The notes under the pieces were generated by a model. The model had not been told where the DNA came from and ran no database searches. It saw only the letters and a program-made list of their open reading frames with translations. Positions 1 to 29,419 of a DNA stretch of 64,000 nt are shown piece by piece. The stretch spans positions 124,001 through 188,000 of the IMG/VR virus record IMGVR_UViG_3300044213_000107. The stretch is one strand, 5' to 3'. Each line of letters begins with the position of its first letter. Position 1 is the first letter of the stretch. The translations under genes were made by a program, and so were the position numbers.

Positions 1-144
1 AAAAATAGTTTTAAGAGATTCAACTACAAATTCCATGGTTGTTTGGTTATCATTTAGATAAATGACATTAAACAATTTTGGAGGTGCAAGATCTAATTTT
101 GGTTCAATACAAGTACGAGTCAAAGTTTCTGTGTTAGTTGTCAT
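1..144 (-). CDS. clpS: ClpS N-degron adaptor; 5' part only, runs off the window edge; not in the ORF track
   Basis: Manual translation MTTNTETLTRTCIEPKLDLAPPKLFNVIYLNDNQTTMEFVVESLKTIF matches the ClpS P-x-x-(F/Y)-x-V-x-x-x-NDxxT-x-x-EFV motif. Confidence 0.85.
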   Translation of the reverse strand, partial: MTTNTETLTRTCIEPKLDLAPPKLFNVIYLNDNQTTMEFVVESLKTIF

Positions 145-163
145 AATTTGTCTTTAAGTTAGA

Positions 164-183
164 AAGGGGAGTTGCCTCCCCTT
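164..183 (-). terminator. Hairpin after hsp20 (terminator or stability element)
   Basis: aaggggag-ttgc-ctcccctt, a perfect 8-bp stem, followed by a short U tract on the minus strand. Confidence 0.5.
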
Positions 184-201
184 ATTATACTGCAACCTAG
201 A

Positions 202-642
202 TTATTTTGCAAATGTTATTGCAATTTTTTTAGGTTTGTCTTCTTCTGGAACTACTTGTTCAAGAGCAATAGCCAAAATACCATTTTTAACTGTTGCACC
301 ACGAACTTCAATGTGTTCGGCTAAAGGGAATGTGCGCACAAAATTGCGAGCCGAAATACCTTTGTGTAGATATTCTACATCATCGCGTTTTGCTTGCTCA
401 CCTTTAACTGTAAGCACATTTTCTTTGAGTTCTACGTCAATTTCACTTTCGTTAAAACCAGCGACTGCAACTTCGATTACATAATGTGTGTCATCAATTT
501 TGACTACATTATGTGGTGGATAATTGCCGTCTGTTTTGCTGTTTGCAAAAGTGCGATTTAACTGCTCAAACAAGTTGTCAAAGCCAATGGCATGACGGTG
601 TAAAGAGGGTAAATCAATCGTGTGAAGTGTAAAATTTGTCAT
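202..642 (-). CDS. Small heat-shock protein Hsp20 (IbpA-like)
   Basis: YPPHNVVK, EVAVAGF, YLHKGISARNF, NGILAI alpha-crystallin motifs; start reset to MTNFTL at 642, which has an AGGAG RBS. Confidence 0.95.
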   Translation of the reverse strand: MTNFTLHTIDLPSLHRHAIGFDNLFEQLNRTFANSKTDGNYPPHNVVKIDDTHYVIEVAVAGFNESEIDVELKENVLTVKGEQAKRDDVEYLHKGISARNFVRTFPLAEHIEVRGATVKNGILAIALEQVVPEEDKPKKIAITFAK

Positions 643-715
643 TTTTGTTTCTCCTTTATAAGCAAGTTTTATGACTAAGTTGTGTAGCCCACTATTGGCA
701 CTACACATTTATTTA
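643..715 (-). promoter_or_regulatory. ROSE-like RNA thermometer 5' UTR of hsp20
   Basis: CUUGCUU-AUA-AAGGAG (666-651) pairs over the SD with a bulged G; 5' hairpin at 707-681; TAAATA/TATAAT at 720-710. Confidence 0.55.
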
Positions 716-733
716 TTATACACAGAAAAAATC

Positions 734-973
734 TTAATACAATCTTTTTGGTAAACTATCTGCTTCGATTTTCTTTTGCCAGCGACGCTTGGCTTGACTA
801 CGTGCTTTTTTACGAGCAGTAGTGGGTTTTTCGTAAAATTCTTTTTCACGAAGTTCTTGTATTAATCCAGTTTCTTGGATTTTCTTTTTAAATTTGCGCA
901 GGGCTTTTTCTACGTTATCGTAGCTAACGTAAACTGTTAGACCTCGTTTGCGACTTCTATTATCGTATGTCAT
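734..973 (-). CDS. rpsU: Ribosomal protein bS21
   Basis: NVEKALRKFKKK...ELREKEFYEKPTTARKK signature; 79 aa, basic. Confidence 0.92.
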   Translation of the reverse strand: MTYDNRSRKRGLTVYVSYDNVEKALRKFKKKIQETGLIQELREKEFYEKPTTARKKARSQAKRRWQKKIEADSLPKRLY

Positions 974-974
974 A

Positions 975-2177
975 TTATGTGTAAATTGGTTCAGTTTTAT
1001 ATTTAACTGTTTCAGCAGTTATTTGTATTTTTTTATAGCCGGCTTGTTTAATTTCGGATATTTTATACAAAAATGGTTGTAAAGTTCTCTCTATGATGCT
1101 TTTTAATGCTCTAGCACCTATTTTCATGCTTGCAGCTTCTTCCGCAATGGTTTTTACAGCTTCTGGTGTAAATTCTAATGCAACCGAGTCTGCTTCAAAA
1201 TAAAACTGCATTTGTTTAATTAAATTGTTTTTTGGTTTAATCAGTATACTAACAAAATCATCTAGAGTTAATTTATTTACAGAAACCAAAACAGGAAATC
1301 TACCTACAAATTCAGGAATCATTCCATACTGTATAAAATCTTCCCAGTCAGCGGTGTCAGAAGTTTTTATGTTATTAGTAGTTGATCTAAACCCTATGCC
1401 GGTTCCGCGGCATCGTTGTTCTATAATTCGATCTAGATCACTAAATGCTCCACTGGCTATAAACAGTATGTTTGTTGTATCTATATCAATTTGGTCCAAG
1501 CTAGGATGTTTTTTGTTATTGCCAATTGGTACTCTGCATACTGTACCTTCAACTAGTTTTAATAGTGCCTGTTGTACACCCTCACCACTAACATCTCGAG
1601 TAATACTAGGCCCTTCGCTTTTACGGCCAATTTTATCTATTTCATCTAAAAATACAATTCCGCGTTGGCATGCTTCTACATCGTAATCTGCTTCAGCAAA
1701 TAAACGAGCAATCATGGTATCTACATCATCGCCAACATACCCCGACTCGGTTAATGTTGTTGCATCGGCAATAACAAACGGTACATTCAAGTATCGTGCA
1801 ATAGTTCGTGCTAATAATGTTTTCCCTGATCCAGTTGAACCAAATAACAATATATTACTTTTTTCTAATTCTACACGACTGTTAAAAAATACACGTTTAT
1901 AATGATTTGTGACCCCGACACTCAATGCTATTTTTGCAGCATCTTGGCCAATTACGTATAAATCTAAAAACTGTTTTATCTTAACAGGATCTAATGCTCG
2001 GTTTATTTTTTTGTCTGCTCTAAAGGTATCGTTGCGTTCTTTGTTTAATATCCCAGAACACAAATCTATACATTCATCGCAAATACCTGCATCGTTGGCA
2101 ACAATAAGTTTGTTTACATCGTTACGGGTTTTACCGCAAAAATTACAATGTATCAGCAGCGTGTTGTTGTCTTTCAT
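975..2177 (-). CDS. clpX: ATP-dependent Clp protease ATP-binding subunit ClpX
   Basis: C4 zinc domain (CNFC...CDEC), Walker A GSTGSGKT, GYVG pore loop, DEID, RDVSGEGVQQ, IGF loop, GARAL. Confidence 0.95.
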   Translation of the reverse strand: MKDNNTLLIHCNFCGKTRNDVNKLIVANDAGICDECIDLCSGILNKERNDTFRADKKINRALDPVKIKQFLDLYVIGQDAAKIALSVGVTNHYKRVFFNSRVELEKSNILLFGSTGSGKTLLARTIARYLNVPFVIADATTLTESGYVGDDVDTMIARLFAEADYDVEACQRGIVFLDEIDKIGRKSEGPSITRDVSGEGVQQALLKLVEGTVCRVPIGNNKKHPSLDQIDIDTTNILFIASGAFSDLDRIIEQRCRGTGIGFRSTTNNIKTSDTADWEDFIQYGMIPEFVGRFPVLVSVNKLTLDDFVSILIKPKNNLIKQMQFYFEADSVALEFTPEAVKTIAEEAASMKIGARALKSIIERTLQPFLYKISEIKQAGYKKIQITAETVKYKTEPIYT

Positions 2178-2526
2178 TGGCTCGTTGAGAAAAATAATCG
2201 AGTATATTGTTGATCTTATTTGCGTTTGCTAAAAAATTCTTAGGCCCATAATAATATGCCTGCGGTAGCGCAGCCAATCTATCTTTAACGGAACTAATTG
2301 TAGTTTCTTCGGTGTTTACAATCAACACATGGCTACGTGCAACTGCGGCATCTAACCATTCTAGATTGTCTAAATCGTATTTGTATAGATATACATTAAA
2401 TGATTCGTCATTGCCCGAACATAATATTGCTAGAGTTTCTACATCAACTGGACTAGCATCAATGATAGTCACTGTATGTTGTTCATCGTCAACAAAATCC
2501 GGGGGTGTAATAAAATTACTGGTCAT
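2143..2526 (-). CDS. Hypothetical protein
   Basis: 127-aa ORF on the majority strand that fills the gap. Confidence 0.65.
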   Translation of the reverse strand: MTSNFITPPDFVDDEQHTVTIIDASPVDVETLAILCSGNDESFNVYLYKYDLDNLEWLDAAVARSHVLIVNTEETTISSVKDRLAALPQAYYYGPKNFLANANKINNILDYFSQRANERQQHAADTL

Positions 2527-4075
2527 GTTTTACCTTTGCTAGATATGCTTCAATTTGGTCATGCTCGACATCAGTTAATAAGTCTGCATCGTATTTACCT
2601 GCGGCCAGTTGTTCTATTAACCAAGGAATATATGCTTCGTTGTAGGCATAACTGTCAGAATTGTTTCTATCCACTTCTACCCATTTTACTTTGTTCCACT
2701 TAAACAATCGAGGCGGTAAGTAATCAACTCGTAGGTACATATCACCTTTAGCAGGGCTTATCGGAAATGCAGTTCCAAATCCTGCAGAAATCTGCTGGTG
2801 CATTTCGTTGTCAGCTAACGCTGTTAAAAATGGCAGTTGCGATACATTTTTTTCTGCTATTTGATTGGGCTTTTCTATATTGCTGTCAAGCATGTCATCA
2901 ACTGCCGCCTGTTCCTCTTTGGTTAGCTCAGCAGACATCAAAGGAACATTGTCTTCGGGTTGACTGTTGGTAACCACCAAAGGTGGTTCTACCACAGGTT
3001 CTTCGGGCGTGTATACCAATGGTTTAACTTCAGTGCCTAGTCCTGTCCAAGGACGGTCCAAATAAGGATGTTTTTCAAACACTGACTTTTCGGGTTCTGG
3101 TTTAACAGGTTCATTAAACATCCATCCAGGCGGGTGCGGGTCAGAAAATGGTTCTGGCTCTACAGGATATTCTTCCTCCGATGCTGCCTGTGCTGCCTTG
3201 ATGTCTACTACATCCATTTGCTGGGACGGATCTTCTATTTCAGCTTTTTCTTCTGCGGTAGGAGGTTCTCCAACTTCTGCTACCCAAGAGTCGTGTTCAA
3301 CTTCTTGGGGTTCTTGTTCTTCGCGAATCCAAGCAAATGTCATTTGGCTGGCCAGTAACATCACAACTGCCAATGGGTCAAACACAATAACAATCAAAAT
3401 AATAACCCAAGTTACTGCTCGCTCCAGGATTGATGCATCTGGATTGTCCCCATACACAAATGCCGCAATGTATTTTATAGGACCAACTTCCGCTTCGACC
3501 TTTCGTACTTCGGCGGCAATAGGCGCACGGGCATCTGTAAGTTCCGCAATAGACTTCTGCGACTGTGATATTTCATTTTGAAGTCTAACACGTTCTTTCT
3601 GCTGGGACTTACGCAAAGCCACAGCTTTGTCGGCACCCTTTTCATCTGTTGAGCGGCCCAGTACTTGGTCCACTCCTTCATCCATCTGTTTAAGTGCCCG
3701 ACGGTCTGCTTCAATATTTTCCTTTTCGGTTTTAATTTTTTCATCATATATTGCTATTTTACTTTGAACATCACCTGATACTAATGTTTGGTCACTGTGT
3801 GCTTTCGAAAGGAAGCCAAATATACCTAAACTGGTAATAAACATTAGAATTGCCACTGCCGTAACTGCATAGGTTTTCATTAGTATGGGCAGTCGTGGCC
3901 AGTGTGCTTTAACCCAACTTGCGGTTACAAGTTTGCCAACTTCCAGGCTAATGCCCATAATAGCAATTGGTATGGCGGCGGCAGAGAAAATGGCCATTAG
4001 ACCCATTACCGAGTAGTAAATGGCCACGCCACTAATGGTTAAACCAGAAAGTAATAATAAGACTGCAAGTATCAT
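2516..4075 (-). CDS. Membrane-anchored coiled-coil protein with acidic/Pro-rich linker
   Basis: Three N-terminal hydrophobic helices, a coiled coil, a further TM segment and a PEPE-rich region; TAAATA 6 nt upstream of the ATG. Confidence 0.8.
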   Translation of the reverse strand: MILAVLLLLSGLTISGVAIYYSVMGLMAIFSAAAIPIAIMGISLEVGKLVTASWVKAHWPRLPILMKTYAVTAVAILMFITSLGIFGFLSKAHSDQTLVSGDVQSKIAIYDEKIKTEKENIEADRRALKQMDEGVDQVLGRSTDEKGADKAVALRKSQQKERVRLQNEISQSQKSIAELTDARAPIAAEVRKVEAEVGPIKYIAAFVYGDNPDASILERAVTWVIILIVIVFDPLAVVMLLASQMTFAWIREEQEPQEVEHDSWVAEVGEPPTAEEKAEIEDPSQQMDVVDIKAAQAASEEEYPVEPEPFSDPHPPGWMFNEPVKPEPEKSVFEKHPYLDRPWTGLGTEVKPLVYTPEEPVVEPPLVVTNSQPEDNVPLMSAELTKEEQAAVDDMLDSNIEKPNQIAEKNVSQLPFLTALADNEMHQQISAGFGTAFPISPAKGDMYLRVDYLPPRLFKWNKVKWVEVDRNNSDSYAYNEAYIPWLIEQLAAGKYDADLLTDVEHDQIEAYLAKVKHDQ

Positions 4076-4123
4076 AGAGTGTATTTATTGGTATTACTCT
4101 AACAGTTTACACAGAGTTTTTGA

Positions 4124-6334
4124 TTATGTCAAGACTTGCCAGCCGATTTCGCCCAAAACATCGGCATTATTTGATGTTGATGTGATTACTAAGGTAAGTG
4201 TATCCGAAACGTTGGCCAGTGTGCGACCAAGTTGGTATTGGAATATACCTTGACTTTCGAGTGTAATGGCAGTTCTGGCATCGGCATAGCCCGCGGCAAC
4301 TTCGGTGCCGCCCGAGACTGCGGTAGCGGCCGAGTCTACATCTACTGCACCAGTAGCAGTAGTACCGGTCCAGGTAGCACCAGTTAAGGTAGCATTCAAT
4401 AATAACGCCCACCGATAGTAGTTTACTGAAGGACTCAGGATGTCTACCTGTGTAGGGTTAACCACAGAATCTAATCTACTGCTATTCATTCTAATGCTGA
4501 CCAAAGGTATATATGTTCCTGCTGATGTAACACGTTTGGTAGTAACACCAGTGCCGGCTGTTTCGGTATAGCCAATTTCGTTGTAGCCGGCTTCGCTCAT
4601 TACACTACAACAAATCTGTTTCATTGTACTGGCCTGTGCGGTTGCACCAGTATTGGTTATTTCATAGCGTATGGGCAGAGTTGCTGTCTGCATATAGGTT
4701 GTGGTATAGTTAGTGCTGTTAGCGTGATGAAACTTGTGGCAACACACATATTGTCCATTGATCACAAAACCTGTGCGTACTGTGCCCACACCTAACCACT
4801 CAATGTCGCACCAGAATATTTGTGGTGCGGCTGTGTTAAGTGTAATGCCGCTAGGACCTGTGCCGTCTAATCGGTCATAGTTCCACGAACTCTGTGCTAT
4901 TCTTTCTTCGGCTAATGTTCCAGAACTTGAACTGCGAATAACCATATTCAGTGTACTGTTGGCCTGTTCAAAGTAAATGCCATTTGAGGCACCAAAGTAG
5001 CCCACACGCTGACGTAGGTTGTTTTGTGCTGGTGCCATAACAAAGGTACACAGGATAAGTAAACTCTTACCTGGCTGATAGTTGAACACACGCTTGGATT
5101 CACGTATGACCTCTGATCCTGAACTTGTGGTAACATTAAGATTACGTACATCGGCGTTGAAGTCGTAGGTAACAGTTCCGCCGGTGCTGACAGCATTACT
5201 AAACTGTCCTCGGGAGATATAACGCAAGGCACTATCAAATATAGTAACTGGTTCACTAACACGTAGTCGACCAAAAGCATCATAGGCAGTTGGTGTAAAT
5301 GTTACTGTTGGTGTGCCATTAATCGATACATTTGCATTAGAAGGAAATGTTGTAGTAATATTACCTGCAACTTGCCAAGGTGTTGTGCCTTGATTTACTG
5401 TAATAGGTTGGTCTGACCCACCAATGTTGCCGTAGATGTGTACGTTGCCAGTAATAGTAGGTAGTTGTGTTATTGATACATTACTTGGAAAGTTATTAAC
5501 ATTTACATTACCAGCAATAGTAGGTAGTTGTGTAATTGATACATTACCTGATACTCCTACACTACCTGTAACAGGTGGCATCTGTGTTATCGATACATTA
5601 CCTAAGGCAGGTAACTGTGTTATGCTTACATTACCACTTACACTAACTCCAGGTAGTTGTGTTATTGATATGTTACCTGATACACCAACATTACCTGTAA
5701 CAGCAGGCATCTGTGTAATGCTAACATTACTTGGGAAATTATCTACATTAACATTACCACGAACAGCAGGTAACTGTGTTATGCTTACGTTGCCAAGTGC
5801 TGGTAATTGAGAAATTGAAACGTTACCACTCACACCAACATTGCCACTTACTCCAACGTTGCCTGTGATAGACGGCATTGTGGTTATCGATACATTACTT
5901 GGAAATACAGGAAAATTATTTACATTAACATTACCAGTTATTGTTGGTAGTTGTGTGATACTTATATTACCAGGAAAGTTAGTAACCGCAACACCTGGCA
6001 TTTGTGTAATGCTAACATTACTGGGAAATGCTGGAAAGTTAGTTACAGCGACATTGCCAGCGACACGAACATTGGCGTTACCATCTAAACTTACTGGTAA
6101 CCAAGGTACTGTTAGTATACCAGATGTACCAATTTCATCAAGATGAACGTGTACTGCATTATCTGGAGTTGAATCAACTTGAACTACACCAGGAATATTT
6201 ACATTGCCACTAATGTTAATGTTGCCAGCAAAGCCTGTGCGTACAGTTACATCACCACCGTCATTTAGATAAAGAGCGTTGGTTAAATTTTGTAGTAACG
6301 GATTTACACCTGGGCCTTTGTTGCTGGTGCTCAT
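4124..6334 (-). CDS. Repeat-rich putative virion structural protein
   Basis: About 11 (G/S)N(V/I)SITQ(L/M)P units followed by a beta-rich C-terminal domain starting DAFGRLRVSEP. Confidence 0.75.
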   Translation of the reverse strand: MSTSNKGPGVNPLLQNLTNALYLNDGGDVTVRTGFAGNINISGNVNIPGVVQVDSTPDNAVHVHLDEIGTSGILTVPWLPVSLDGNANVRVAGNVAVTNFPAFPSNVSITQMPGVAVTNFPGNISITQLPTITGNVNVNNFPVFPSNVSITTMPSITGNVGVSGNVGVSGNVSISQLPALGNVSITQLPAVRGNVNVDNFPSNVSITQMPAVTGNVGVSGNISITQLPGVSVSGNVSITQLPALGNVSITQMPPVTGSVGVSGNVSITQLPTIAGNVNVNNFPSNVSITQLPTITGNVHIYGNIGGSDQPITVNQGTTPWQVAGNITTTFPSNANVSINGTPTVTFTPTAYDAFGRLRVSEPVTIFDSALRYISRGQFSNAVSTGGTVTYDFNADVRNLNVTTSSGSEVIRESKRVFNYQPGKSLLILCTFVMAPAQNNLRQRVGYFGASNGIYFEQANSTLNMVIRSSSSGTLAEERIAQSSWNYDRLDGTGPSGITLNTAAPQIFWCDIEWLGVGTVRTGFVINGQYVCCHKFHHANSTNYTTTYMQTATLPIRYEITNTGATAQASTMKQICCSVMSEAGYNEIGYTETAGTGVTTKRVTSAGTYIPLVSIRMNSSRLDSVVNPTQVDILSPSVNYYRWALLLNATLTGATWTGTTATGAVDVDSAATAVSGGTEVAAGYADARTAITLESQGIFQYQLGRTLANVSDTLTLVITSTSNNADVLGEIGWQVLT
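5380..6070 (-). repeat. Degenerate tandem coding repeat (GNVSITQLP family)
   Basis: Recurrent tgtgttat(c/g)...acattac DNA units that match the peptide repeat. Confidence 0.85.
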
Positions 6335-9478: not shown

Positions 9479-9513
9479 ATCGTATTTATGGATATTGCAG
9501 AGTATTTATAGTC

Positions 9514-24930: not shown

Positions 24931-24990
24931 TTTATTTCTCCTTAAATGTGTGCGTTACCGCATGTAAATATTTATCATCTTGTACAAAAA

Positions 24991-29346: not shown

Positions 29347-29419
29347 TTTATTGTTATTTATGAGTGTTTATTAAAGATATCGGAATAGTAAATTGGCTAT
29401 ATTTTTAAACATAACATTG

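What the first reader, a model, noticed from the sequence alone, without database searches (positions are those of the whole stretch)
643..715. ROSE-like RNA thermometer in front of the phage Hsp20
Seen: the leader reads ...AAACUUGCUU-AUA-AAGGAG-AAACAAAAAUG. CUUGCUU pairs with AAGGAG leaving a bulged G, and a long 5' hairpin (707-681) precedes it. Known: bacterial ROSE elements upstream of sHsp genes carry U(U/C)GCU paired to the SD with a bulged G. Inference: the phage carries its own temperature-gated translation switch. I do not recall this being described in phages.
Basis: partly seen in the sequence, partly recalled or inferred. Interest (0 to 1): 0.65.

Follow-up and report, generated by a model that had tools for sequence, protein, structure and literature searches.

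The report
ROSE-type leader on phage hsp20
The small heat-shock gene of this freshwater giant phage keeps the same two-hairpin "ROSE" RNA leader that gates translation of bacterial ibpA by temperature. The leader is conserved in front of hsp20 in more than 140 other phages, including cultured cyanophages, but its response to temperature has not been tested.

Summary
On the minus strand, a 27-nt hairpin (707-681) is followed by CUUGCUU (666-660), which can pair with the Shine-Dalgarno AAGGAG (656-651) and leave G663 bulged. This lies 8 nt upstream of the AUG (642-640) of an IbpA-like hsp20.

In one genome the motif is no rarer than chance: 3 copies in 260 kb against 3.2 in shuffles. Rfam ROSE_3 scores only 27 bits, below its threshold of 43. 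The support comes from comparison:
- 135 of 142 distinct viral hsp20 leaders with a GGAG SD carry U(U/C)GCU in the bulged-G register, with 98-100% of core pairs intact.
- Both hairpins show covariation.
- The anti-SD is as conserved as the SD (0.94 and 0.90), against 0.50 at third codon positions.

The same architecture precedes hsp20 in S-PM2, P-SSM4, HTVC008M, Melnitz, HTVC103P and Phosso. It also precedes chromosomal ibpA in Polynucleobacter, there behind a sigma-32-type promoter. The phages instead have a TATAAT or TATAAATA box.

I therefore read it as a ROSE-like leader of the short Pseudomonas ibpA type that was captured together with ibpA. Temperature gating is the likeliest function but is not shown. 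Nearest-neighbour modelling is inconclusive, and autorepression by the sHsp is a live rival. I found no earlier report of a ROSE element in phages.

The parts
710..720 (-). Promoter-like box TATAATAAATA. It contains both a TATAAT -10 hexamer and the ATAAATA core of T4-type late promoters, and it predicts a transcript start at about 708-704, at the foot of hairpin I.
   Evidence: Sequence read. The box is the most conserved leader segment in the clade (pairwise identity 0.95; alignment A1). ATAAATA is depleted in the window (10 copies against 25.6 expected), and several copies lie just 5' of ORF starts. No transcript start has been mapped, so this is inferred.
681..707 (-). Hairpin I: a stable 5'-terminal stem-loop (8 pairs, a bulged G, 3 pairs, 4-nt loop). 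Its inner module 5'-UGCC/GGG-3' (U.G, bulged G, C-G, C-G) is nearly identical to hairpin I of the Pseudomonas ibpA ROSE.
   Evidence: Fold. The Rfam ROSE_3 alignment covers model positions 1-27. Covariation and a paired A/U indel (20 leaders with both, 34 with neither, 1 exception) appear. All 10 pairs show compensatory changes in the broad set (that alignment is fitted to the model).
671..675 (-). GUCAU, complementary to AUGAC (642-638). It is a candidate outer clamp that would sequester the start codon.
   Evidence: The MFE structure pairs these at all temperatures from 5 to 50 C. GUCA is present in 55 of 55 clade leaders with identity 0.84, against 0.27-0.30 in the flanking spacers. Covariation is not possible because AUGAC is coding, so the pairing is inferred. 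The clamp is not conserved outside this clade.
660..666 (-). Anti-SD CUUGCUU, containing the ROSE motif UUGCU. G663 is the bulged G.
   Evidence: Read. Identity in the clade is 0.94. YGCU is found in 135 of 142 distinct viral hsp20 leaders, and the core pairs are 98-100% intact only in the bulged-G register.
657..659 (-). Terminal loop AUA of hairpin II.
   Evidence: Read. The loop varies in sequence and length among relatives (identity 0.30), as expected for a loop.
651..656 (-). Shine-Dalgarno AAGGAG, the 3' strand of hairpin II.
   Evidence: Read. It lies 8 nt upstream of the AUG. Identity in the clade is 0.90.
202..642 (-). hsp20 / ibpA-like small heat-shock gene (146 aa). AUG at 642-640, stop at 204-202.
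   Evidence: Pfam HSP20, E 1.5e-20. It is 49% identical to Salmonella IbpA, 44% to P. aeruginosa IbpA and 44-46% to Polynucleobacter IbpA. The in-frame ATG at 708 is not the start: an open upstream in-frame ATG occurs in only 4 of 55 relatives.

Best explanation
The 65-nt 5' leader of the phage hsp20 mRNA (about 707-643, minus strand) is a homologue of the short two-hairpin ROSE-like leader of proteobacterial ibpA, the Rfam ROSE_3 type. It was acquired together with the gene, and it has been kept while the bacterial sigma-32 promoter was replaced by a phage TATAAT/TATAAATA-type promoter.

Proposed mechanism:
- Transcription starts at the foot of hairpin I.
- Hairpin I is a stable 5'-terminal stem that does not melt. 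It protects the mRNA and nucleates its folding.
- Hairpin II masks the SD by imperfect pairing with CUUGCUU across the bulged G663. In this clade it also masks the AUG, through the GUCAU/AUGAC clamp.
- Because the helix is AU-rich and imperfect it is only marginally stable. Warming or stress opens it and lets the 30S subunit bind, so the phage sHsp is translated mainly when proteins are at risk of aggregating.

Shown: the anatomy, the conservation, the covariation, the homology to bacterial leaders and the promoter swap. Inferred: the transcript start, the role of the clamp, and the response to temperature.
For: 1. Rfam ROSE_3 is the only family to match here. The match is full length and lies exactly at the hsp20 start (27 bits). 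Relatives score 24-36 bits at the same place.
2. In the 55 distinct leaders of the clade, 93.8% of cells are paired against 45-53% for slid controls. Hairpin I shows compensatory changes and a paired indel.
3. Across 145 distinct viral hsp20 leaders, 135 of 142 have YGCU 5-22 nt upstream of GGAG, and the six core pairs are 98-100% intact only in the bulged-G register. The next outer pair covaries: C occurs only opposite G (17 of 17) and U only opposite A (33 of 33). Only 1 leader has a perfect CUCC anti-SD.
4. Selection acts on the leader. Identity is 0.94 for the anti-SD, 0.90 for the SD and 0.95 for the promoter box, against 0.50 at third codon positions and 0.27-0.30 in spacers and loops.
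5. A covariance model built from the clade (R1) finds the element once in the 260-kb genome. It also finds it at the 5' end of hsp20 in most of 82 diverse viral loci and in Melnitz, HTVC103P, C48C1, P-SSM4, S-PM2, Phosso and HTVC008M.
6. Two Polynucleobacter chromosomes carry ibpA behind a CTTGAAA...CCTTAAAT sigma-32-like promoter followed by the same AU-rich two-hairpin leader. So the low-GC form occurs in bacteria too, and only the promoter differs in phages.
7. The Pseudomonas version has been shown by experiment to be a thermometer, with hairpin II melting and hairpin I staying closed (PMC3669281).
8. Two-state Turner estimates put the phage helices well below the validated mesophile controls: window 22 C, or 39 C with the clamp; median of 135 phage leaders 41 C; P. 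aeruginosa 58 C; Salmonella 68 C. This fits cold-water hosts.
Against: - There are no experimental or transcript data. All 12 public runs that hold this DNA are DNA metagenomes.
- Every phage copy is below Rfam's gathering score.
- Turner partition functions predict almost no change in SD accessibility for this leader between 5 and 42 C (0.40 to 0.43). The minimum-energy fold uses a shifted 3-pair register rather than the canonical one.
- The predicted cost of opening this ribosome-binding site is only median among SD-bearing ORFs of the window (rank 13 of 23).
- The upper G-C pair, whose loss abolished repression in P. putida, is absent here. The helix may therefore be open at most temperatures.
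- The core motif alone occurs at the chance rate in this genome.
- The SD side cannot covary freely, so most support for hairpin II is conservation and one-sided changes.
- The sequences are related, so the counts are not independent events.
Confidence: 0.6

Rival explanations
1. The leader is an autorepression platform. The phage sHsp binds the structured 5' UTR of its own mRNA and blocks translation, as E. coli IbpA does. When aggregating proteins titrate the sHsp, translation resumes. On this view the leader senses aggregation rather than temperature. This is compatible with the thermometer and could act on top of it.
For: - IbpA of E. coli, Cedecea and Vibrio represses its own translation by binding its ROSE-type 5' UTR. 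This requires R93, an aromatic residue at Y34, and positive charge at R97 and K98 (PMC10474464).
- The equivalents R99, Y41 and R103 are invariant in the phage clade. The Arg is conserved in at least 90% of the diverse phage Hsp20 aligned, and the aromatic residue is kept as Y or F in every one of them.
- The inner sequence of hairpin I (AUGCC...GGGU) is conserved from Pseudomonas to phages well beyond what pairing alone needs. That suggests recognition by a factor.
- A sensor of aggregation load makes sense for a phage in cold water, where heat shock is rare.
Against: - The K98 equivalent is Thr in the window clade.
- R93 lies in a generally conserved part of the alpha-crystallin domain, so its presence discriminates weakly.
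- Binding has not been tested for any phage sHsp.
- It does not by itself explain why the bulged-G, imperfect anti-SD is kept in 135 of 142 leaders and a perfect one in only 1.
Confidence: 0.2
2. The leader is constitutive. Hairpin I stabilises the mRNA 5' end, and the weak anti-SD pairing merely sets a fixed, modest translation rate. In this reading it is an inherited structure with no conditional switching in the phage.
For: - The Turner model predicts flat SD accessibility from 5 to 42 C and a median opening cost.
- The canonical helix has dG37 of +1.8 kcal/mol.
- 5'-terminal stem-loops are known mRNA stabilisers, as discussed for Pseudomonas hairpin I in PMC3669281.
Against: - The anti-SD is as conserved as the SD itself, and far more than neutral sites (0.94 against 0.50), across phage lineages whose Hsp20 proteins are only 31-44% identical.
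- The specifically imperfect bulged-G geometry is retained, where a fixed attenuator could drift.
- A second chaperone gene (dnaK) in a marine viral contig carries the same motif. This links the motif to stress proteins rather than to hsp20 mRNA housekeeping.
Confidence: 0.17
3. The resemblance is chance: an AU-rich intergenic region that happens to contain UUGCU near an SD.
For: The core pattern occurs 3 times in the genome against 3.2 expected. YGCU lies within 23 nt of GGAG in 7 of 23 SD-bearing ORFs of the window. The Rfam score is below threshold.
Against: The motif is conserved in 135 of 142 distinct leaders, both hairpins covary, the alignment to ROSE_3 is position-exact and full length, and bacterial ibpA leaders share the architecture.
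Confidence: 0.02

Closest known systems
Short two-hairpin ROSE-like thermometer of Pseudomonas ibpA (Rfam RF02523 ROSE_3; Krajewski et al. 2013, PMC3669281)
   Same: - It is the 5' UTR of an ibpA-type sHsp gene, about 60-65 nt long, with two hairpins.
- Hairpin I sits at the 5' end and has the same inner module (A-U, U.G, bulged G, C-G, C-G; AUGCC...GGGU).
- Hairpin II pairs U(U/C)GCU with the SD across a bulged G.
- The C-G pair closing the outer end of the core is present.
- ROSE_3 aligns to the phage leader over its full length.
   Different: - It scores 27 bits here (24-36 in relatives) against 69 bits for genuine P. aeruginosa and a threshold of 43.
- Hairpin II is AU-rich and lacks the upper G-C pair (Turner dG37 +1.8 against -3.3 kcal/mol).
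- The AUG is predicted to be clamped by GUCAU, whereas the Pseudomonas AUG is free.
- The promoter is phage-type rather than sigma-32.
- Temperature response has been shown for Pseudomonas and is untested here.
Chromosomal ibpA leaders of Polynucleobacter (not annotated; found here, L223 and L224)
   Same: They have the same AU-rich two-hairpin architecture, the same AACUUGCUU...AAGGAG, a similar hairpin I (GAUGCC...GGGU) and an outer clamp helix around hairpin II. They are also below threshold for ROSE_3, at 33-35 bits.
   Different: They are bacterial, on long chromosomal contigs, and sit behind a sigma-32-like CTTGAAA...CCTTAAAT promoter. Their proteins are only 44-46% identical to the window Hsp20. 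The match was found in only 2 of 31 genomes searched.
Enterobacterial ibpA ROSE (RF01832 ROSE_2) and rhizobial ROSE (RF00435)
   Same: The same UYGCU/SD bulged-G thermosensing hairpin sits upstream of sHsp genes. In Salmonella ibpA, CUCGCUGAUUUCAGGAG shows the same register.
   Different: They have 3-4 hairpins and are longer and GC-richer. Neither family matched the phage leader even at E up to 10.
Previously reported phage RNA thermometers: lambda cIII, the SPbeta blyA fourU, and a sigma-70 fourU in a gut Caudoviricetes (PMC11182007, PMC10586365)
   Same: They are cis-acting 5' UTR structures in phage genes that are proposed or shown to gate translation by temperature.
   Different: They belong to different structural classes (an alternative-structure switch, and fourU), sit on different genes, and are each confined to one or a few phages. 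None is ROSE-type, none is on hsp20, and none is conserved across phage families.

Membership tests
ROSE-like RNA thermometer (literature definition) | Located in the 5' UTR of a small heat-shock (ibpA/hsp20-type) gene | tested here: met
   It lies directly upstream of a gene matching Pfam HSP20 (E 1.5e-20) that is 49% identical to Salmonella IbpA. The transcript start is inferred from the promoter box, not mapped.
ROSE-like RNA thermometer (literature definition) | [quoted passage not shown] | tested here: met
   There are two hairpins. 93.8% of cells are paired in 55 leaders against 45-53% for slid controls, and hairpin I shows compensatory changes. In the broad set 90% are paired against about 52% (alignment fitted to the model).
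ROSE-like RNA thermometer (literature definition) | A conserved U(U/C)GCU motif imperfectly paired with the SD, with a bulged G | tested here: met
   UUGCU lies at 665-661 and G663 is bulged. 135 of 142 distinct viral hsp20 leaders have the motif, core pairs are 98-100% intact only in the bulged-G register, and the outer pair covaries.
ROSE-like RNA thermometer (literature definition) | Temperature-dependent melting of the SD hairpin and temperature-dependent translation | not testable with these tools
   The Turner model is inconclusive: SD accessibility runs from 0.40 to 0.43 between 5 and 42 C, and the two-state Tm is 22 C, or 39 C with the clamp. The model omits the non-canonical pairs known from ROSE. 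Reporter assays and structure probing are needed.
Rfam RF02523 ROSE_3 | Covariance-model score at or above the curated gathering threshold (43 bits) | tested here: not met
   The window scores 27 bits. Relatives and cultured phages score 21-36 bits. The control, P. aeruginosa ibpA, scores 69 bits. All matches are full length and at the hsp20 start. Chromosomal Polynucleobacter ibpA leaders also fall short, at 33-35 bits, so the model appears tuned to GC-rich Pseudomonas.
Rfam RF02523 ROSE_3 | G-C pairs flanking the SD/anti-SD core on both sides (Krajewski 2013) | tested here: not met
   The lower C-G pair is present (C666-G651; C-G in 107 and U.G in 25 of 135 leaders). The upper side closes with U-A pairs and has no G-C pair.
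Bacterial ibpA heat-shock module | Sigma-32-type promoter (CTTGAA-N13-18-CNCCATAT) in front of the leader | tested here: not met
   The phage has TATAATAAATA at 720-710 and no CTTGAA. Polynucleobacter ibpA does have CTTGAAA...CCTTAAAT.
fourU RNA thermometer | A run of four U residues paired with the SD | tested here: not met
   The anti-SD is CUUGCUU, interrupted by G and C. No fourU-type Rfam family matched.
IbpA self-repressed 5' UTR (Miwa and Taguchi) | The sHsp carries R93, an aromatic residue at position 34 and basic residues at 97/98, and it binds its own structured leader | tested here: inconclusive
   The equivalents R99, Y41 and R103 are invariant in the clade, and the K98 equivalent is Thr (PMC10474464). 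Binding cannot be tested here.

The most novel reading that the evidence does not exclude
A ROSE-type translational sensor is a conserved, near-universal partner of the hsp20 auxiliary gene across T4-like cyanophages, pelagiphages, OM43 phages and freshwater or soil giant phages. It responds to temperature, and possibly also to aggregation load through sHsp autorepression. Phages kept the host's post-transcriptional stress sensor but replaced the sigma-32 promoter with their own, and tuned the helix to the low temperatures of aquatic hosts. This would be the first widespread class of RNA thermometer in viruses. It would also mean that the enigmatic core cyanophage gene hsp20 is translated conditionally rather than as a fixed part of the infection programme.
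Probability: 0.5. Interest if true: 0.75.

Novelty: new member of a known kind. Interest (0 to 1): 0.6.

Why it matters
hsp20 is a core gene of T4-like cyanophages and is common in large freshwater phages. Its role is still debated: protection of the host under stress, or a scaffolding aid during capsid assembly (PMC7674155). A conserved ROSE-type leader implies that its translation is conditional, which favours a stress-linked role.

The idea can be tested directly in cultured systems: S-PM2 on Synechococcus WH7803, P-SSM4 on Prochlorococcus, HTVC008M on Pelagibacter, and Melnitz on OM43.

Three further points follow:
- Only three RNA thermometers have been reported in phages. This would add a fourth class that spans several phage families.
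- It is a clean example of regulatory capture, in which the gene and its riboregulator are kept while the promoter is exchanged.
- Rfam's ROSE_3 model misses low-GC versions, both in phages and in Polynucleobacter.

If the tuning to low temperature is real, these leaders would also be a natural set of cold-range thermosensors.

Tried and rejected
- Megablast of window 1-6000 against cultured phages found nothing.
- RNAalifold on the MAFFT alignment A1 returned no structure because the alignment is gappy. I specified the structure by hand and counted pairs instead.
- The genome search with RF02523 on the window's own genome reported nothing even at E up to 10, although cmscan finds the 27-bit match. 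I treat that as a miss of the tool's fast first look.
- Single-protein searches with S-PM2 and HTVC008M Hsp20 reached only close relatives. The alignment-based search worked.
- The scan of genome contigs returned mostly short MAG contigs that carry the phage-type promoter box, so they are probably mis-binned phage DNA and give no reliable host assignment.
- The covariance model R1 did not match the bacterial controls L102 and L103 at E up to 1. It encodes clade-specific features such as the promoter box and GUCAU.
- No RNA run holds the region, so I did not use read laying, because contigs cannot show a transcript start.
- Alternative start at ATG 708 (a 168-aa ORF): rejected. It has no SD, and an open in-frame upstream ATG occurs in only 4 of 55 relatives.
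- Hairpin I as terminator of the upstream S21 gene: rejected. It has no U tract, the terminator scan does not list it, and the conserved promoter box lies between the S21 stop (734) and the hairpin.
- fourU class: rejected, because there is no U4 run.
- One literature query timed out and two calls were malformed.
- No structure prediction, complex prediction or large protein search was needed.

Full report
WHAT IS THERE. The window is part of a 260,723-nt linear viral record estimated to be 74% complete. Relatives reach 354 kb. All public runs that hold this DNA are freshwater metagenomes.

At its left end the minus strand carries, in order of transcription:
- ClpX, 2177-975
- ribosomal protein S21, 973-734
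- a 91-nt intergenic region
- an IbpA-like hsp20, 642-202
- the start of a ClpS-like gene, 144-1

Read on the minus strand, the intergenic region contains:
- TATAATAAATA, 720-710
- a 27-nt hairpin, 707-681
- GUCAU, 675-671
- CUUGCUU, 666-660
- AUA, 659-657
- AAGGAG, 656-651
- eight nucleotides, then AUG at 642-640

CUUGCUU can pair with AAGGAG as C-G, U-A, U.G, bulged G663, C-G, U-A, U-A.

IS IT MORE THAN CHANCE? Taken alone, no. The pattern YUYGCU-N(2-12)-AGGAG occurs three times in the phage genome against 3.2 in shuffles. YGCU lies near a GGAG in 7 of 23 SD-bearing ORFs of the window.

Rfam's ROSE_3 model (RF02523, built on the short Pseudomonas ibpA thermometers) is the only family that matches here. 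The match covers the whole model and puts the model's AUG on the hsp20 AUG. It scores 27 bits against a gathering score of 43 (E 0.009 for 3 kb). Nothing in the window reaches any gathering score.

COMPARATIVE EVIDENCE. A search of IMG/VR with the Hsp20 protein returned 80 loci at 63-89% amino-acid identity. Their upstream regions give 55 distinct leaders, and almost all contain:
- a (G)TATAA(TAA)ATA box
- hairpin I, with the core GUAG(A)UGCC...GGG(U)CUAC
- GUCA (55 of 55)
- YUUGCUU (54 of 55)
- a variable loop
- A(A)GGAG and AUGAC

On a MAFFT alignment that was not fitted to any structure, my 22-pair structure is 93.8% paired against 45-53% when the 3' partners are slid. Hairpin I shows compensatory changes, for example one pair that occurs as G-C 19 times, C-G 18 times and A-U 3 times. 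It also shows a paired insertion of an A-U pair, present on both sides in 20 leaders and absent on both sides in 34.

The SD helix is 99.4% paired, but it varies only on the anti-SD side (C to U, which keeps a wobble pair). This is expected when the other strand is an SD.

Pairwise identity by segment shows selection on the leader: promoter box 0.95, anti-SD 0.94, SD 0.90 and GUCAU 0.84, against 0.50 at hsp20 third codon positions and 0.27-0.30 in spacers and loops.

A covariance model built from these leaders (R1) finds exactly one strong match in the phage genome, the hsp20 leader.

THE ELEMENT IS GENERAL TO PHAGE hsp20. R1 and ROSE_3 also match immediately upstream of hsp20 in cultured phages:
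- Methylophilales phage Melnitz (R1 50 bits, ROSE_3 34 bits)
- Pelagibacter phages HTVC103P and HTVC008M
- phage C48C1
- Prochlorococcus phage P-SSM4
- Synechococcus phage S-PM2
- the 469-kb Sinorhizobium phage Phosso

An alignment-based scan returned 80 more diverse viral loci; together with the S-PM2 and HTVC008M relatives these give 82 distinct leaders. Of these 82, 72 carry U(U/C)GCU 18-45 nt before the AUG, and R1 hits the 5' end of hsp20 in most of them.

Pooling everything gives 145 distinct leaders. Of these, 142 have a GGAG SD and 135 have YGCU 5-22 nt upstream. In the register that leaves the G bulged, the core pairs are 98-100% intact, and shifted registers break them. The first pair outside the core covaries: a 5' C occurs only opposite G (17 of 17) and a 5' U only opposite A (33 of 33). 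Only one leader has a perfect CUCC anti-SD.

Several exceptions are variants of the same idea, for example GACGCUC...GAGGUC, which again pairs around a bulged G.

On the model-fitted alignment of the broad set, all ten pairs of hairpin I show compensatory changes (90% paired against about 52% slid). That alignment leans towards the structure.

ORIGIN. The inner part of hairpin I (GAUGCCGA..GUCGGGUC in many phages) is almost identical to the ROSE_3 consensus. The protein is 44-49% identical to the proteobacterial IbpAs compared here (Salmonella, P. aeruginosa, Polynucleobacter) and 41% identical to S-PM2 Hsp20.

Two Polynucleobacter genomes carry ibpA on long contigs. In both, a sigma-32-like promoter (CTTGAAA, a spacer, CCTTAAAT) is followed by the same AU-rich two-hairpin leader (GAUGCC...GGGU, then AACUUGCUU, loop, AAGGAG). 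Their minimum-energy fold shows an outer clamp helix around hairpin II; in one of them (L224) the ROSE-type core helix is also predicted.

So the phage element is the low-GC aquatic form of the bacterial ibpA leader. What phages changed is the promoter. The conserved TATAAT or TATAAATA box sits 5-9 nt before hairpin I, which puts the predicted 5' end at the foot of that hairpin. ATAAATA is depleted in the window (10 copies against 25.6 expected), and several copies lie just upstream of ORF starts. This is what a T4-type late promoter motif would look like, but no start site has been mapped.

HOW IT PROBABLY WORKS. In Pseudomonas, hairpin II melts between 25 and 42 C and frees the SD. Hairpin I stays closed and is needed for proper folding and probably for mRNA stability (PMC3669281). 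By homology I propose the same here, with one clade-specific addition: GUCAU can pair with AUGAC and so also mask the start codon. The minimum-energy fold contains this clamp at every temperature from 5 to 50 C.

The thermodynamics are not decisive:
- With Turner parameters the canonical window helix has dG37 of +1.8 and dG15 of -0.7 kcal/mol. Its two-state Tm is about 22 C, or 39 C with the clamp.
- The validated controls give 58 C for P. aeruginosa and 68 C for Salmonella. The median of 135 phage leaders is 41 C.
- This ordering fits hosts that live at 5-25 C.
- However, the partition function predicts almost flat SD accessibility (0.40 to 0.43 between 5 and 42 C).
- The cost of opening the ribosome-binding site is only median for the window (rank 13 of 23).
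- The upper G-C pair that matters in P. putida is missing.
- The Turner model also ignores the non-canonical pairs known from the ROSE structure.

I score this test as inconclusive.

RIVALS. The strongest rival, which is also compatible with the thermometer, is autorepression. E. coli, Cedecea and Vibrio IbpA bind their own ROSE-type 5' UTR and repress translation until aggregates titrate them. This depends on R93, an aromatic residue at position 34 and basic residues at 97 and 98 (PMC10474464). The phage proteins keep the equivalents R99, Y41 and R103, although the K98 equivalent is Thr. The sequence-level conservation of hairpin I hints at a bound factor.

A purely constitutive leader is hard to reconcile with an anti-SD that is conserved like the SD, and with the retention of the imperfect geometry. 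Chance is excluded by the comparative data.

NOVELTY. In the searchable literature only three phage RNA thermometers are reported: lambda cIII, the SPbeta blyA fourU, and a sigma-70 fourU in a gut phage (PMC11182007). Searches that combined phage or cyanophage, hsp20 and thermometer found nothing relevant. Papers on phage HSP20 discuss only the protein. The library is incomplete, so this is absence of evidence.

I classify the element as a new member of the ROSE-like class in a new, broad viral setting. It is not a member of Rfam ROSE_3 as curated, because its score is below threshold and one flanking G-C pair is missing.

VERDICT.
ROSE-type identity has confidence about 0.9, and temperature gating about 0.55-0.6.
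- Interest is 0.6. The element itself is a known kind. Its near-universal association with a core phage gene of unknown role, the promoter swap, and the availability of cultured systems make it a worthwhile finding that can be tested directly.

Noticed in passing
window 1-2177, minus strand: A proteostasis and translation cluster in a giant freshwater phage: ClpX (2177-975), ribosomal protein S21 (973-734), hsp20 (642-202) and a ClpS-like gene (144-1), all on one strand. S21 directly upstream of hsp20 recurs in some relatives and in a Haliscomenobacter-MAG contig (L218).
   Followed up: partly
L167:744-830 (IMGVR_UViG_3300020424_000003, an 80.7-kb marine viral contig): Immediately after the hsp20 stop there is a GC-rich hairpin, then CUUUGCUU-AAU-AAGGAGG, then the ATG of a DnaK-like ORF (MSKIIGIDLGTTNSC...). 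So a second phage chaperone gene carries the same ROSE-like anti-SD motif (R1 23 bits; sequence).
   Followed up: partly
window 710-716, 4082-4088, 9483-9509, 24969-24975, 29355-29361 and others: ATAAATA is under-represented in the window (10 copies against 25.6 expected). Eight of the ten are on the minus (coding) strand, and several lie a few to about 40 nt upstream of ORF starts. This makes it a candidate T4-type late promoter motif for this phage.
   Followed up: partly
window 681-707 and 651-666; also all related leaders: Both hairpins contain the same small module: a U.G pair, a bulged G and a C-G pair. It reads 5'-UGC/GG-3' as AUGCC/GGGU in hairpin I and UUGCU/AGGA in hairpin II. In hairpin I the U.G alternates with C-G across phages (U.G 34, C-G 27). 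Whether this repeated module is a recognition element is unknown.
   Followed up: no
L223:1496-1563 and L224:1496-1562 (Polynucleobacter chromosomal contigs): Chromosomal ibpA genes with a sigma-32-like promoter and a two-hairpin ROSE-like leader score only 33-35 bits on Rfam ROSE_3, below the threshold of 43. Rfam therefore appears to miss low-GC betaproteobacterial ROSE elements. Only 2 of 31 Polynucleobacter genomes gave a hit.
   Followed up: partly
L081/L219, L222 (Polynucleobacter MAG); L082/L221, L218 (Haliscomenobacter MAG); L084-L091: hsp20 loci carrying the phage-type ATAAATA box and leader sit in bacterial MAGs of very different phyla. Those in the Polynucleobacter, Derxia and Rhodobacteraceae MAGs are on short contigs (2-7 kb), while others, such as the Haliscomenobacter locus L082, are on contigs of 17-142 kb. 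The short ones are most likely mis-binned phage contigs. The Polynucleobacter association (74% amino-acid identity) is at best a weak hint about the host.
   Followed up: partly
window 706-708, minus strand: An ATG in frame with hsp20 lies inside hairpin I and extends the mechanical ORF to 168 aa. It has no SD, and an open in-frame upstream ATG is found in only 4 of 55 relatives. Gene callers could mis-annotate the start here.
   Followed up: yes
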